This document shows, piece by piece, positions 46,938-54,059 of a stretch of 64,000 bases of DNA (position 1 is its first letter; each line of letters begins with the position of its first letter). The notes beneath the pieces were generated by a model. The model saw nothing but the letters and a program-made list of their open reading frames with translations, had not been told where the DNA came from and did not search any database. The position numbers were made by a program, and so were the translations under genes. The stretch is taken from the NCBI GenBank assembly GCA_965644265.1, contig OZ286473.1, positions 24,738,001 to 24,802,000 on the forward strand, written 5' to 3'. This DNA comes from Glycera tridactyla (Eukaryota).

Positions 46938-47278
46938 AGAAAGAGTTGGGTTCAAAGTTTGTGTTTGAATAGAGGAGTCTCCAGATGTAAACAACGCAGG
47001 TCAATGAATGGCTTCAGAATAGTTGTATACGTCTCACATAACACAAATACTGTCAGAACAAATTCATTTTCTTCAGAAAAACTTTTTTGAGAACGAATGG
47101 AGGTGTTTCGTAGTTAGCAACTAGTGGAGTTGAAGATAGTGCCTATAAGACAACGGCATCTGGTAATAAACATATGAGCAATTTTTGATAAATAGTATTG
47201 GAAACCTGATTTTTGGAAAATGTATTTTGTAAAATTCTTGACATTTTGTTCAAAATACGAAACTATTGTTTTAGGTCG

Positions 47279-47361
47279 CACGTGGCTAGATGGCGCCCCA
47301 GGCGGGGTATATAAGAGCTGCAACCGGACTGCTCGGCCCACTTTCAGCTCCAACGAGTCAG
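47279..47361 (+). promoter_or_regulatory. Retroelement promoter and short leader
   Basis: E-box CACGTG 47279-47284, GC box GGCGGGG 47301-47307, TATATAAG 47308-47315. A pyrimidine-rich initiator-like sequence lies ~30 nt downstream, then a possible donor CAG|GTGATA at 47361/47362. Confidence 0.6.
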
Positions 47362-47389
47362 GTGATAGTTCTATTGTTACGCGCGGCGC

Positions 47390-50199: not shown

Positions 50200-51715
50200 G
50201 ACGTGGTTAGAGGGTTACAATGAAGGTGAGAAGTCTTTCCTGATTCAAGGGTTCTTAAAGGGTTTTGACATTGGGTTCAAGGGTACATCTCCAGGGTACA
50301 GGGCTAGAAACTCGGCATCTGTACAGGGCAAGGAAGGGATAGTACGGCACTTGATCATGGAAGAAGTAAAGTTGGGTCGAATCCAAGGTCCATTCTTGGA
50401 ACCTCCTTTTATAAATTTACAAGTGTCCCCTATTGCCATAGTACCTAAAGCTGAACCAGGTGTATATAGACTACTACACAATTTGTTGGCTCCGTATAAT
50501 GAGTTTTCGATTAATGCCAATATTCCGGATGCGTTAGCTTCGGTTCATTATACTACTATACAGTCAGTAGTTGACCATGTTATTGATATCGGGAAAAATG
50601 CATACCTTTGCAAATCAGACATCAAATCTGCTTTCAGAATCATTCCAATTGCTCCTCATCAATATCATTTGATGGGCATGAAATTGGGACCGGAGTATTT
50701 CGTAAACTGTTGTTTAGCGATGGGTGGAAGGTCTTCTTGCCGGTTGTTTGAAAAATTTTCAACGGCTATTCATTGGATTTGTGTCAATAAGCTGGATATA
50801 TCACGAATATCACATATGCTTGACGATTTTTGCATAATTGCATCTGGCGAACAATCATGTCAGGAACAGTTATCACGTTTCACAAATCTATGTGAGTCAC
50901 TGGGGGTCCTGTTGTGTCCTAAGAAAACGGTCCTCCCGTCCCAAAAGATGTCCTTTTTGGGGATTGAGATTAATGTTCGAGAAGGCTATGTGAGGGTTCC
51001 ACAAGACAAGCTGCAGAAGTATGGCCGGATCATCGATGAACTGTTACGAGCGGGTTTTTGCACCATGGGGGACATGAGATCTTTGATAGGAAAATTAAAC
51101 TGGTGTTCGTCATTGGTTAAACCAGGGAGGACATTTCTCAGGGGTCTTATAGACTCTATGAAAGGTTTTAAAAACCCAACCCATTTGGTCTCATTTTCCA
51201 AAGAGGTAGAGGCTGATCTTGTCATGTGGAAAGAGTTTCTACAAGCATACAATGGGTATTCCTTCTTACGAGAGTTGACTATAAATCGTCATGTCTCTGA
51301 GCATTTGTATTCTGATGCCTCAAAACATGGTGCGGGAGTGGTGTTCGGAAATTTGTGGTTTCAACTCAGTTTCGCAGGCACTTGGTGTGAGCAAAACATT
51401 GCGTACCTAGAGTTCTTTCCCTTCTTGGTAGCTCTAGTAACTTTCAGATTGGCTCTGAGACATAAAGAAGTTATCATGCATTCAGACAACATGGCAGTGG
51501 TTGAGGTCCTAAACAAACGTTCGGCCAAAGATCCTCAACTCATGAGAATCATGAGGCACATCATGCTTTTTAGTCTCCTCAATGACATTGATTTTAGAGC
51601 AATTCATTTACCAGGGGTTCAGAATATAATACCTGACTTATTGTCACGTTCTTCGGTTTCACAGGAGAAACTCAGATCTGTAGGCCTGGCTATTCACCCG
51701 GTAGCGGTTCCTTGA
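50168..51715 (+). CDS. Reverse transcriptase - RNase H (DIRS/Ngaro type), intact
   Basis: RT motifs SPIAIVPK, KSDIKSAFR, LAMGGRSS, HMLDDF, FLGIEI. RNase H residues SDAS, YLEF, SDN, PDLLSR. The frame overlaps the gag C-terminus and has no ATG near its start. Confidence 0.95.
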   Translation: MVTPVNPHHLETWLEGYNEGEKSFLIQGFLKGFDIGFKGTSPGYRARNSASVQGKEGIVRHLIMEEVKLGRIQGPFLEPPFINLQVSPIAIVPKAEPGVYRLLHNLLAPYNEFSINANIPDALASVHYTTIQSVVDHVIDIGKNAYLCKSDIKSAFRIIPIAPHQYHLMGMKLGPEYFVNCCLAMGGRSSCRLFEKFSTAIHWICVNKLDISRISHMLDDFCIIASGEQSCQEQLSRFTNLCESLGVLLCPKKTVLPSQKMSFLGIEINVREGYVRVPQDKLQKYGRIIDELLRAGFCTMGDMRSLIGKLNWCSSLVKPGRTFLRGLIDSMKGFKNPTHLVSFSKEVEADLVMWKEFLQAYNGYSFLRELTINRHVSEHLYSDASKHGAGVVFGNLWFQLSFAGTWCEQNIAYLEFFPFLVALVTFRLALRHKEVIMHSDNMAVVEVLNKRSAKDPQLMRIMRHIMLFSLLNDIDFRAIHLPGVQNIIPDLLSRSSVSQEKLRSVGLAIHPVAVP

Positions 51716-52626
51716 GATTACAACCCCAGCTATTGCAATCCATGGTAGACACGCTTATAGAGGATTCTTTTGCGAGATCTACTATAACCAGTTATAAAAA
51801 GGTTTGGGATGAGTTTTGCTCATTTGTTACTTTGTATAATTTAGACTTATCACATACAACCATCTGCCTGTATGTAGCGCATCTACATGAGCAAGGGCTG
51901 AAGGTTGCTACAATCAGATCAAGATTGTCGGCGATATCTCATGGATTTAAATCCACTAATCAGTTGGACCATTGTAAGCATTATTGTGTCCAAAGAACGG
52001 TTATGGGGATACAAAAGAATTCAAAAGGGGTTGATAAGAGGCAACCCATTAATCTGGAAGTTCTAGATAGACTTATAGAAGGGGTTTTTAGAGTAGCAAA
52101 GAATTACGAGGAAGCCATGCTAGTAGCAACCTTGTTCTCTTGGGCATATCATTTTTGTTTCCGCATATCTGAGTATGCAAAAACCGGAACCAGCGACCAT
52201 ACGGTGAGACTAAGTGATCTCGAGCAAGCATTAGACAGAGGGCAGATTGTTGCTTTCAGACTCACTTTGAGGTCATATAAGTTCTCGACGGGGGCTAGGA
52301 TTTTCGTTTTGTGTCAAAAACCAGGTATAAGATACTGTCCTGTAGACTTAATGACCAAATATCTTATTACAAGAGGTAACGTAGAGGGACCTATTTTTGT
52401 CCGGAATAATGTTGGGATCTCGAGCCAGTATGTCAATAATTGGATAAAGGTCCTAGGAAACCCAATATTTGGGATTGGACATAACCTTAGCAGTCATTCT
52501 TTTCATATTGGACGCTGTTCTGATTGGGTTGAAGAAGGATGTTCCAATGAGCAGATTCATCTAAAAGGTAGATGGGCTTCTTCCGCTTTCCAGGGTTATG
52601 CCCGTCCTGAATCCATTAGAATGTAG
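51712..52626 (+). CDS. Tyrosine recombinase (integrase) of the retroelement; catalytic HxxR Arg replaced by His
   Basis: N-terminal SAM-like region, FRISE (Arg I), SYK, HSFHIG instead of HSFRIG, GRW and terminal FQGY. Likely start ATG 51742. Confidence 0.93.
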   Translation: MRLQPQLLQSMVDTLIEDSFARSTITSYKKVWDEFCSFVTLYNLDLSHTTICLYVAHLHEQGLKVATIRSRLSAISHGFKSTNQLDHCKHYCVQRTVMGIQKNSKGVDKRQPINLEVLDRLIEGVFRVAKNYEEAMLVATLFSWAYHFCFRISEYAKTGTSDHTVRLSDLEQALDRGQIVAFRLTLRSYKFSTGARIFVLCQKPGIRYCPVDLMTKYLITRGNVEGPIFVRNNVGISSQYVNNWIKVLGNPIFGIGHNLSSHSFHIGRCSDWVEEGCSNEQIHLKGRWASSAFQGYARPESIRM

Positions 52627-54059
52627 GGCCGCAGCTCAGGAAGTTTGGTTAGTGGGTAGGGCCGTCCGTCCCTCACTTGCGTCCTGGGACCCTTGCTAAG
52701 TTGGAGCCCTGTATTTCTTCCGGGAAGGATGGTCCTTGCTGTTGTCCGTCTAGGGTCCATGACCTTAGTTGACTTGTATACGCTCTATTGATGTTTCTTT
52801 TCATTTAGGTGAATTTTGAAAAAAGGGGGAAAAAGTAGATATTACTTAATTTTTGGGTCTTAATTTTCAAAAAATCTGGGTTGGGGGGGAAGGGGGTGGG
52901 GAGACATGACTTGTCGACACTCATGTGTCTTGTACATACTGTGTATATGGTCCTTGAATACATTCAAGCCACGACACTTTGGTGTCTAGTATTTACATGA
53001 GGCAATTCATTGGTCCGAAGCCTAGTGGCTTCTTGTCATTGTGTGTGGATCACTGATGCACCTGGTGATGCATGTGCATCATTATGTTAAGACTCGGGGT
53101 CAAGGCCAGAGTCTGTCAGCGCACTGTGCCTTTGGGCACGTTTAGGCCACTTAAACAAAATTACAGCCAGTAGGGCTATTGTGGTGTTCAAAGGCACACG
53201 TGCAAAGCTTTGTTACAATATTCGCCAAATACATACATATGAAATGATGTTTGACTCTGTGTTCAATTATGGAATCACTAAGCCAAATCTGTGGTCGTGG
53301 TTCAGGAGAGAACTTGTGTTTAGGGGGTGTGAGAGTGAAGACAGAAACATAGGTATTTGCAAAGCTGGATGATTGAGAAAGGCTGTGCTGTTGTGACTGA
53401 AAGAAGTGGTCAAAAAAGAATGCGTTGGGTTACAGAGGAGCTGACCTATTAATGAGGGCAAAGATGAAAGTGTTGTCAATTCAGGGGACTGTTTCACAAC
53501 ACAGATATAGTGTATGTGCCAAAATATGCCCAAAAATGCATGCAAAATCAAAAAAAGGGCAATAACTCCTTACAAAATGATTCAATCATAAAACCCTGAC
53601 AATATGCACTGCAGAACCTTATGATGATTATTCTGTGAAACTCTGGTGAATATCGCATGTAAAATGAACGAGAAATTGCACAGTCAAGAAAGTGTGACGG
53701 ACTGACGGACGGCCACTATTTTAATATCCCTACGCCTTTCAGCGAGGGATAATAACACATCGAATTGTCATAATCAGATGAGGTGTGTTGAGAGAACTGA
53801 CCTAATGAGATTATCAACGCCGGGTGGCGTACGAGCTTTAATCGACATATAGGGCCATCTGTTGATTATACAGTTTCGTGGTAGTATTACATATATTTGT
53901 GACTTCAAAGTCCCTACGAATCAGGCAAGCGCTTTGAGTGTGCTTTGACCACTTCACCTCCTGTAATCTTCATGGGGGAAGAATTAGCGATTTGGCAAGT
54001 ATCAACCCATCATTGGACCGCTTCCAAGGTAGATGTGCAATGAGTTCAAGAAAGAAAGG

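What the first reader, a model, noticed from the sequence alone, without database searches (positions are those of the whole stretch)
47270..53160. Tyrosine-recombinase retrotransposon with an intact SGNH hydrolase placed FIRST (SGNH-gag-RT/RH-YR)
Seen: four co-oriented coding units. The first is a 259-aa SGNH hydrolase with GHS/GSND/DGIH motifs directly behind a TATA promoter. Known: Ngaro elements lack the DIRS1 methyltransferase domain, and to my knowledge those carrying a hydrolase place it 3' of the recombinase; a 5' SGNH esterase is instead typical of ORF1 of some CR1/L2/RTE-X LINEs. Inference: this may be an undescribed Ngaro-like lineage in which the lipid-binding/esterase module is the first translated product, e.g. 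for particle or membrane association.
Basis: partly seen in the sequence, partly recalled or inferred. Interest (0 to 1): 0.85.

Follow-up and report, generated by a model that had tools for sequence, protein, structure and literature searches.

The report
Ngaro-like retrotransposon with esterase gene first
This is a dead copy of a tyrosine-recombinase (Ngaro-like) retrotransposon whose accessory esterase gene sits in front of gag instead of behind the recombinase, and related elements in other genomes show that this unusual order is a conserved design, not an accident of this locus.

Summary
The four co-oriented genes are real: SGNH hydrolase (47390-48169), gag (48306-50199), RT/RNase H (50132-51715) and tyrosine recombinase (51712-52626). 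The SGNH protein folds confidently as an SGNH hydrolase and keeps its catalytic residues. The recombinase keeps its catalytic residues and its profile matches Cre. There is no methyltransferase domain.

This copy is not intact. Its gag has two in-frame stops and one frameshift, and no split direct repeats are detectable.

All ten distinct related loci fetched that carry the SGNH gene have it just upstream of gag, and none has one after the recombinase. These loci represent roughly eight divergent families (20-57% SGNH identity). They come from four metagenome-labelled sequence samples of unidentified hosts. One relative (L012) has textbook Ngaro repeats (A1...B1-A2-B2, 99.7-100% identical), with the SGNH start codon 3 nt after A1. 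Two more families agree. SGNH and RT divergence track each other, so the gene is inherited with the element.

The open literature describes the Ngaro hydrolase only after the recombinase. Repbase and Dfam could not be checked.

Verdict: a new variant of a known kind, of moderate interest. The esterase's function is inferred only.

The parts
46848..46863 (.). Upstream copy of an exact 16-nt direct repeat; a possible target-site duplication or element edge.
   Evidence: An exact match of 16 nt or more between the two flanks occurred in 2 of 1000 dinucleotide-preserving shuffles. It is not significant by gapped local alignment.
46864..47389 (+). 5' non-coding region, if the 16-nt repeat marks the edge. 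It begins with a (CA)n microsatellite (46863-46940) and holds TATATAAG at 47308-47315.
   Evidence: The TATA motif is not conserved in relatives, and no A1 repeat is detectable.
47390..48169 (+). SGNH/GDSL-type hydrolase ORF of 259 aa, open, with GHS, GSND and DGIH motifs; the first gene of the element.
48306..50199 (+). gag-like gene with a C-terminal zinc knuckle. It is broken by in-frame stops at 48432-48434 and 49128-49130 and by a frameshift between 49907 and 49969.
   Evidence: It is homologous to the uninterrupted gag ORFs of L001, L004 and L005.
50132..51715 (+). Reverse transcriptase / RNase H ORF, open. The profile match runs 50150-51712. There is no methyltransferase domain.
51712..52626 (+). 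Tyrosine recombinase ORF, open, with the first ATG at 51742. Catalytic R151, K190, HxxR, W and Y are present.
52627..53553 (+). 3' non-coding region, if the 16-nt repeat marks the edge. It is A-rich at its end, and no B1/A2/B2 repeats are detectable.
53554..53569 (.). Downstream copy of the exact 16-nt direct repeat.

Best explanation
**Shown.** The window holds one degraded copy of a Ngaro-like (DIRS-order) tyrosine-recombinase retrotransposon. Its gene order is SGNH hydrolase, gag, RT/RNase H, recombinase. This order is the conserved architecture of a family-rich lineage. In relatives with intact split direct repeats, the SGNH start codon lies 3 to 95 nt after the A1 repeat, and the B1-A2-B2 block follows the recombinase. 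The hydrolase gene diverges in step with RT, and its catalytic Ser, Asn, Asp and His are retained. The window copy cannot move by itself: gag is broken and the terminal repeats are missing.

**Inferred from the published Ngaro model.** Such elements are transcribed from A1. The RNA is reverse-transcribed, and the B1-A2 junction is used to restore a closed circular DNA. The recombinase then inserts that circle. On that RNA the hydrolase would be the first ORF met by ribosomes. gag lies 88-250 nt further on in the seven loci where an intact gag start directly follows. It would be reached by re-initiation, leaky scanning or a separate transcript.

**Inferred by analogy with the LINE ORF1p esterase.** The protein is an active esterase, possibly lipid-binding, that helps the particle in trafficking or membrane association.

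**Relation to the classical layout.** On the circular intermediate the gene order is the same as in classical Ngaro (hydrolase, gag, RT, recombinase). What differs is where the repeat and junction block sits.
For: - Genes and domains.
- Conserved SGNH-then-gag order in ten distinct loci from four sequence samples (the NCBI assemblies GCA_013332675.1 and GCA_029979705.1 duplicate contigs of the first).
- One SGNH per locus, always 5' of RT, never 3' of YR.
- L012 layout: A1 4425-4737, SGNH ATG 4741, YR ends 10618, B1 10713-11109, A2 11106-11418, B2 11437-11833. The A copies are 99.7% identical and the B copies 100%.
- L014: A1 8686-8906, then SGNH at 9001; B1 13083-13160 and A2 13159-13379.
- L004: a 105-nt, 100% identical repeat starts 53 nt after YR and recurs at the contig end, while L003 runs from the A region into SGNH.
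- Co-divergence: pairwise SGNH and RT identities correlate at r=0.93, with the same groupings (L003+L005; L012+L013+L015).
- Catalytic residues are conserved in 176 of 183 family members that align at both the Ser and His positions.
- The breaks in gag.
- Published position of the hydrolase after YR: PMC9210276.
Against: - The window copy has no split direct repeats, so its own ends and its membership by that criterion are not shown.
- No sibling copy from the same genome could be found; the best RT relative is only 50% identical.
- No Ngaro, DIRS1, PAT or VIPER reference sequences were available for a phylogeny.
- Several supporting contigs are short metagenome assemblies that may wrap around through repeats.
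- The hosts of the relatives are unidentified.
- Transcription start, translation mode and enzyme activity are all inferred. The TATA motif is not conserved.
- The profile similarity to the LINE esterase 4c1b is weak (E=0.05), so the functional analogy is loose.
Confidence: 0.8

Rival explanations
1. The SGNH ORF belongs to the 3' end of an upstream or tandem copy with the classical order gag-RT-YR-SGNH, so 'first' is only an effect of where one starts reading.
For: On a circle the two orders are the same. L003 and L005 contig ends overlap (86 and 63 nt), and L003 shows YR, then 1.5 kb, then SGNH and gag, as tandem copies would.
Against: - In L012 the complete repeat block B1-A2-B2 lies between YR and the flank, A1 lies directly before SGNH, and unrelated flanking DNA sits on both sides.
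- L014 likewise has A1 before SGNH.
- YR and SGNH are separated by 1.2-1.5 kb of non-coding repeats, whereas SGNH and gag are 88-250 nt apart where an intact gag start follows directly.
- No YR remnant lies upstream of the SGNH ORF in the window or in L001.
Confidence: 0.05
2. The SGNH ORF is a host gene, or the ORF1 esterase of an unrelated LINE, lying next to a Ngaro element by chance.
For: SGNH esterases are the ORF1 of some CR1, RTE-X and Penelope elements (PMC3905857). The window protein scores below Pfam's cut-off.
Against: - The same adjacency and orientation recur in about eight divergent families.
- The SGNH gene co-diverges with RT.
- It lies inside the repeats of L012 and L014.
- No LINE-type RT or endonuclease is nearby.
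- The LINE esterase 4c1b is only a weak profile match, E=0.05.
Confidence: 0.02
3. This particular copy was not inserted by the recombinase. It is a retrocopy of an element transcript inserted by another machinery such as a LINE. That would explain a 16-nt target-site duplication, an A-rich 3' end and the absence of split direct repeats.
For: - Exact 16-nt direct repeats bracket 6,690 bp containing all four genes. That length is similar to relatives (6.8-7.4 kb).
- A match this long arose in 2 of 1000 shuffles.
- An A-rich run precedes the 3' copy.
- No A or B repeats are present.
Against: - The repeat was noticed after the fact and is not significant by gapped alignment.
- The A run is short and impure.
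- About 440 nt lie upstream of the TATA motif, so the segment is not obviously a transcript from that promoter.
- A transcript running through B1-A2 would still carry a copy of A.
Confidence: 0.15

Closest known systems
Ngaro-like retrotransposons with a hydrolase ORF (e.g. Xenopus DIRS-53_XT / DIRS-54_XT; Goodwin and Poulter 2004, as summarised in PMC9210276)
   Same: - gag, RT/RNase H and tyrosine recombinase lie on one strand, with no methyltransferase.
- An SGNH hydrolase is carried as an extra gene.
- In relatives (L012, L014, L004) the split direct repeats follow the A1...B1-A2-B2 pattern.
- The circular order of the four genes is identical.
   Different: - Here the hydrolase ORF lies between A1 and gag, not after (and overlapping) the recombinase ORF.
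- The repeat and junction block follows the recombinase directly.
- The window copy lacks the repeats.
- Whether the two hydrolases are the same gene family was not testable, because no reference sequences were available.
ORF1p esterase of CR1/L2, RTE-X and Penelope non-LTR elements (ZfL2-1, PDB 4c1b; PMC3905857)
   Same: An SGNH esterase is encoded as the first ORF of a retroelement RNA, ahead of the RT gene. It has the SGNH fold and keeps catalytic residues.
   Different: - The element class and integration enzyme differ.
- Here the esterase is a stand-alone protein of about 220-290 aa, with no coiled coil in the AlphaFold2 model of the window protein, and a separate gag follows it.
- Block I reads G-H-S rather than G-D-S.
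- Profile similarity is weak (E=0.05, against 5e-6 for bacterial GDSL proteins). That gives no sign of special kinship, though the origin of the gene was not tested.
GDSL esterase ORFs of rotifer Terminons and rotifer LTR retrotransposons (PMC6431247, PMC5718144)
   Same: An accessory esterase/lipase gene recruited by a retroelement.
   Different: In the rotifer LTR elements the esterase ORF lies downstream of pol, as ORF3. The element classes differ, and no sequence comparison was made here.
DIRS1-like and PAT-like elements
   Same: They have the same order of enzymes (RT/RNase H plus tyrosine recombinase) and a gag-like ORF.
   Different: Those carry a methyltransferase domain, and DIRS1 has inverted terminal repeats with an internal complementary region. 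Neither feature is present here.

Membership tests
Ngaro-like (order DIRS) | Tyrosine recombinase ORF with the catalytic residues, downstream of RT/RNase H on the same strand | tested here: met
   R151, K190, HxxR, W and Y are present. The profile hits Cre at E=9e-8 over residues 19-288. PF00589 matches 4 of 6 aligned relatives, though not the window protein itself. The gene order is shown.
Ngaro-like (order DIRS) | RT plus RNase H in one ORF, with no methyltransferase domain | tested here: met
   RVT_1 and RVT_thumb match, with weaker RNase H matches. The Ty3 RT/RNase H structure is hit at E=5e-10. The 515-aa ORF ends where the recombinase ORF starts, and there is no MT hit.
Ngaro-like (order DIRS) | Split direct repeats A1...B1-A2-B2, in the window copy | tested here: not met
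   There is no direct repeat between the 5' and 3' non-coding regions apart from a 16-mer. I read this as decay or an aberrant insertion of this copy. The copy is assigned to the lineage by protein homology only.
Ngaro-like (order DIRS) | Split direct repeats A1...B1-A2-B2, in relatives of the same lineage | tested here: met
   L012 has the full set at 99.7-100% identity. L014 has A1/A2 at 99.5% and B1 abutting A2. L004 has B1 and a cut B2 at 100% over 105 nt.
Ngaro-like (order DIRS) | RT/RNase H and recombinase cluster with Ngaro reference elements in a phylogeny | not testable with these tools
Classical hydrolase-bearing Ngaro | Hydrolase ORF located after the recombinase ORF | tested here: not met
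   The profile scan finds one SGNH per locus, always 5' of RT, and none 3' of YR in the window, L003/L004, L005, L012 or L013.
SGNH/GDSL hydrolase superfamily | Conserved blocks I (Ser), III (Asn) and V (Asp-x-x-His), and the flavodoxin-like fold | tested here: met
   GHS, GSND and DGIH are present. The AlphaFold2 model has pLDDT 91.5 and pTM 0.88. Foldseek gives probability 1.0 to GDSL lipases, PAF-AH and TesA. The Pfam score for the window protein is below the cut-off (21.9 against 32.9 bits), but many relatives carry a PF13472 hit in the database's precomputed Pfam annotation.
LINE (CR1/L2, RTE-X) with ORF1 esterase | LINE-type ORF2 (endonuclease plus RT), no recombinase, esterase fused to a coiled coil | tested here: not met
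   The RT is of the LTR/DIRS kind with RNase H, and a recombinase follows it. The match to 4c1b is only E=0.05.
DIRS1-like / PAT-like | Methyltransferase domain; for DIRS1, inverted terminal repeats plus an internal complementary region | tested here: not met
   There is no MT hit and no inverted terminal repeats around the element.

The most novel reading that the evidence does not exclude
A widespread, old sub-lineage of Ngaro-like elements has moved the repeat and junction block, and with it the promoter. This makes the SGNH esterase the first product translated from the element's RNA. That layout would be undescribed for tyrosine-recombinase retroelements and convergent with the esterase-first ORF1 of some LINEs. 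It would imply that esterase-first placement has been favoured at least twice, and it would offer a second, independent system for finding out what retroelement esterases do.
Probability: 0.45. Interest if true: 0.6.

Novelty: new variant of a known kind. Interest (0 to 1): 0.5.

Why it matters
SGNH/GDSL esterases have been picked up repeatedly by unrelated retroelements: LINE ORF1, Penelope, rotifer Terminons and LTR elements, and Ngaro. Their role is still unknown. The only biochemical study (ZfL2-1, PMC3905857) points to lipid binding.

A Ngaro-like lineage that places the same kind of enzyme first, as a stand-alone protein ahead of a normal gag, has three uses:
- It separates the esterase from the RNA-packaging function, so the esterase can be studied alone.
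- It gives a natural comparison with Ngaro elements that carry the gene last.
- It shows how easily the linear gene order of circle-forming elements changes when the junction moves.

For genome annotation, the practical point is that a GDSL-like ORF directly upstream of a gag-RT-recombinase block should be annotated as part of the element, not as a host lipase gene.

Tried and rejected
- Other copies in the window: none.
- Terminal or split repeats in the window copy: blastn at word sizes 7-9, the repeat finder and Smith-Waterman against shuffles all found nothing beyond a 16-mer.
- TATA box as a conserved promoter: absent in 9 of 10 relatives.
With A1 it returned only the contig already known.
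- A viral-contig scan with the RT alignment found nothing.
- Host identification failed. Accession and sample names are not in the paper library. Rfam and tRNA scans of the window were empty. Other window ORFs have no Pfam family.
- Goodwin and Poulter 2004 and Poulter and Butler 2015 are not held in the library, so the classical position of the hydrolase rests on later papers that cite them.
- The Argopecten irradians relative (L017) looked at first like an SGNH-less member. It also lacks the gag core and the repeats, so it is a degraded copy and says nothing either way.
- dN/dS on the SGNH gene was not attempted. The available pairs are at most 57% identical in protein, so synonymous sites are saturated. 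Conservation of catalytic residues was used instead.
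Full report
**1. What is in the window**

Between about 47.3 and 52.6 kb the + strand carries the only substantial coding block of the 64-kb window.
- SGNH: ORF 47390-48169, 259 aa.
- gag: a gag-like reading frame that starts at the ATG at 48306 and ends at 50199.
- RT/RH: a frame open from 50132 to 51715 (515 aa as listed).
- YR: ORF 51712-52626, 304 aa.

GC content here (42-46%) is like the rest of the window. The window looks like animal nuclear DNA, with CT-rich and (CA)n simple repeats directly upstream. 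I do not take it for human. N runs were left untouched.

**2. The four genes**

*SGNH.*
- The first ORF matches Pfam Lipase_GDSL_2 only below the curated cut-off (E=2.7e-4, 21.9 against 32.9 bits).
- It has a homologue at 41% identity with E=2.7e-50. In the exhaustive search 380 representative proteins score E<=0.001.
- An AlphaFold2 model built on 35 relatives has mean pLDDT 91.5 and pTM 0.88.
- Its best PDB matches are all SGNH enzymes: Bacteroides GDSL lipases, PAF acetylhydrolase, sialate O-acetylesterase and E. coli TesA, at probability 1.0 and TM 0.5-0.68. Viral matches are phage SGNH esterase domains.
- The catalytic blocks are present: GHS at 36-38, GSND at 121-124, DGIH at 216-219.

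*RT/RH.* The third unit matches RVT_1 (2e-8) and RVT_thumb, with weak RNase H hits. As a profile it hits the Ty3 RT/RNase H structure at 5e-10. No methyltransferase is found.

*YR.* The fourth unit shows only the N-terminal SAM-like domain in Pfam. Aligned with relatives it keeps R151, K190, HxxR, W and the tyrosine. Its profile matches Cre recombinase over residues 19-288 at 9e-8.

*gag.* In relatives gag is one ORF of 662-778 aa with a C-terminal zinc knuckle. In the window the same frame has stops at 48432-48434 and 49128-49130. The zinc-knuckle part is shifted into another frame between 49907 and 49969.

So 'intact' holds for the hydrolase, RT/RH and recombinase, but not for the element.

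**3. Ends of the window copy**

Ngaro elements are defined by split direct repeats (A1...B1-A2-B2; PMC9210276, PMC8547959). None can be found here:
- blastn at word sizes 7-9, the repeat finder and local alignment against shuffles give nothing between the 5' and 3' non-coding parts.
- The only feature is an exact 16-nt direct repeat at 46848-46863 and 53554-53569. It brackets 6,690 bp, a length close to relatives (6.8-7.4 kb).
- A match that long arose in 2 of 1000 dinucleotide-preserving shuffles, but I found it after the fact.
- It could be a target-site duplication. That is not expected of recombinase-mediated insertion, so this remains unexplained.

The TATA-like motif at 47308-47315 is real, but only one of ten relatives has such a motif upstream of the gene.

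**4. Relatives**

No sibling of the same family could be reached. The best RT hit is 50% identical. More distant relatives are plentiful: 341 RT homologues at E<=1e-10, including predicted proteins of two scallops.

I fetched the genomic context for RT and SGNH homologues. The SGNH-carrying contigs come from four sequence samples deposited as metagenome assemblies at ENA (ERZ23486739, ERZ23486758, ERZ23498369, ERZ26052378). The NCBI assemblies GCA_013332675.1 and GCA_029979705.1 duplicate contigs of the first sample. Their hosts could not be identified. Some contigs exceed 1 Mb and carry other eukaryotic retrotransposons. An eleventh relative, from Argopecten irradians, carries no SGNH gene and is described at the end of this section.

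| Locus | SGNH | gag | RT | YR |
|---|---|---|---|---|
| L005 | 371-1138 | 1268-3604 | 3549-5171 | 5129-6049 |
| L004/L003 | L003 4900-5667 | L004 717-2705 | L004 2656-4272 | L004 4314-5141 |
| L012 | 4741-5370 | 5620-8173 | 8001-9713 | 9710-10618 |
| L013 | 5259-5957 | 7003-7899 | 8001-9737 | 9737-10501 |
| L015 | 632-1561 | 3887-5344 | 5391-6914 | 6944-7804 |

- L001, L009 and L010 are short contigs on which SGNH is followed by the start of a gag-like ORF. L011 is a 996-nt contig that ends just after its SGNH ORF.
- L014 is an internally deleted derivative that keeps SGNH and gag.
- A profile scan of all six frames found exactly one SGNH per locus, always upstream of RT on the same strand, and none after the recombinase.
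- The gap from the SGNH stop to the gag start is 88-250 nt in the seven loci, the window included, where an intact gag start directly follows.
- The Argopecten irradians copy (L017) has RT, recombinase and the zinc knuckle but no gag core, no repeats and no SGNH. It is degraded at its 5' side and therefore uninformative.

**5. Is the hydrolase really first?**

These elements pass through a circle, so gag-RT-YR-SGNH and SGNH-gag-RT-YR are the same circular order. The question is where the termini lie.

*L012* settles it for one family:
- A1 is 4425-4737 and A2 is 11106-11418 (313 nt, 99.7% identical).
- B1 is 10713-11109 and B2 is 11437-11833 (397 nt, 100% identical).
- B1 starts 95 nt after the recombinase stop and abuts A2.
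- Unrelated low-complexity DNA flanks A1 and B2.
- The ATG that begins the conserved part of the hydrolase (4741) is 3 nt past the end of A1.

*L014* has A1 at 8686-8906, with the SGNH ATG at 9001. Its B1 (13083-13160) abuts A2 (13159-13379, 99.5% identical).

*L004* carries a 105-nt, 100% identical repeat that starts 53 nt after the recombinase and recurs at the contig end. The overlapping contig L003 runs from the same region straight into the SGNH ORF about 40 nt later. That is what an assembler does when A1 equals A2.

So in three divergent families the repeat block lies between the recombinase and the hydrolase, and the hydrolase is the first ORF of the linear element. The rival reading, that the hydrolase is the tail of an upstream tandem copy, is therefore very unlikely.

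**6. Is the hydrolase part of the element?**

- Pairwise identity of the hydrolase tracks that of RT across six elements (r=0.93). The same groups form in the hydrolase, RT and recombinase: L003 with L005 (57, 61 and 59%), and L012 with L013 and L015. The pairs are not independent, so this is descriptive. It fits vertical inheritance with the element and not repeated capture.
- In 221 family members aligned to the profile, block I reads G-H-S (His in 182 of 189, Ser in 183 of 189). Asn is kept in 213 of 217, Asp in 208 of 215 and His in 208 of 215.
- Of the 183 members that align at both the Ser and His positions, 176 keep both, six have lost both together and one has lost only His.

This argues for selection on catalysis in most lineages.

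**7. Comparison with what is known**

- The papers I could read describe the Ngaro hydrolase as an additional ORF. Where a position is given it lies after the recombinase, overlapping it (PMC9210276 for Xenopus DIRS-53_XT and DIRS-54_XT, citing Goodwin and Poulter 2004 and Poulter and Butler 2015; also PMC7192593 and PMC6681497).
- Searches combining Ngaro, DIRS or tyrosine recombinase with SGNH, GDSL, hydrolase or esterase found no report of a 5' position.
A consensus with this order may already exist there unremarked.
- An esterase as first ORF is known from CR1/L2, RTE-X and Penelope elements. The ZfL2-1 esterase (PDB 4c1b) is active and binds acidic phospholipids (PMC3905857).
- The present family matches 4c1b only at E=0.05, against 5e-6 for bacterial GDSL proteins. 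So there is no sign of special kinship with the LINE esterases.
- GDSL esterases are also accessory genes of rotifer Terminons and LTR elements (PMC6431247, PMC5718144). Recruitment of this enzyme by retroelements is recurrent. What is new here is the position.

**8. Mechanism**

*Shown:* the gene content, the order, the position relative to the repeats in relatives, conservation of catalytic residues, and the defects of this copy.

*Inferred from the published model for split-repeat elements:* transcription from A1 to B2, reverse transcription with the internal B1-A2 junction restoring a closed circle, and recombinase-mediated insertion.

*Inferred from layout:* the hydrolase is the first ORF on that RNA. 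gag, RT and the recombinase follow through short gaps or overlaps (gag/RT overlap of about 68 nt, RT/YR overlap of 4 nt in the window). That suggests re-initiation, frameshifting or leaky scanning.

*Inferred by analogy only:* an esterase or lipid-binding helper role.

**9. Verdict**

I rate it a new variant of a known kind, with moderate interest (0.5).

Breaks are only described.

Noticed in passing
window 46848-46863 and 53554-53569: An exact 16-nt direct repeat brackets 6,690 bp that hold all four genes, and the 3' copy follows an A-rich run. A match this long arose in 2 of 1000 shuffles. It may be a target-site duplication, which recombinase insertion should not produce.
   Followed up: partly
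window 43982-44270, 54065-54355, 58090-58388 (-), 42729-42875, 57151-57349, 42254-42334: A short interspersed repeat of about 290 bp with at least six copies in both orientations (75-87% identical), several of them next to masked N runs. It is unrelated to the element.
   Followed up: no
window 44676-46385 and 46863-46940: A long CT-rich low-complexity tract and a (CA)n microsatellite lie directly upstream of the element. The many ORFs listed there are artefacts of the repeat.
   Followed up: no
SGNH family alignment (proteins P0001, P0122-P0351): The family signature in block I is Gly-His-Ser instead of the usual Gly-Asp-Ser (His in 182 of 189). Six members have lost the catalytic Ser and His together, suggesting non-catalytic derivatives.
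   Followed up: partly
L014:8686-13379: An internal-deletion derivative keeps A1, SGNH, gag and a 70-codon RT stub, then B1-A2. It has no recombinase and its A repeats are 99.5% identical, so it is probably a young non-autonomous copy. A second match to B lies 1.1 kb further on (14526-14603).
   Followed up: partly
L003:1-86 / 6829-6914 and L005:1-63 / 7157-7219: The contig ends overlap (97.7% and 98.4% identical), giving periods of 6,828 and 7,156 bp. This could be assembly wrap-around through the A repeat, tandem copies or circular DNA.
   Followed up: no
L013:1-4598 (- strand): A Bel/Pao-type LTR retrotransposon (Pao_retrotransp, DUF1759, DUF5641) lies directly upstream of the Ngaro-like element, so the host of that contig is a eukaryote rich in retroelements.
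   Followed up: no
L017:10673-13561 (Argopecten irradians CM084271.1): A scallop relative (RT 38% identical) is annotated as an 'uncharacterized protein' gene. The copy has RT, recombinase and a zinc knuckle but no gag core, no SGNH and no repeats. A 70-bp-period satellite lies at 4216-5881 upstream.
   Followed up: partly
L012:5620-8173: In the otherwise young L012 element the gag region is split into two ORFs in different frames (5620-6234 and 6491-8173). This is either a frameshift or a real two-ORF gag.
   Followed up: no
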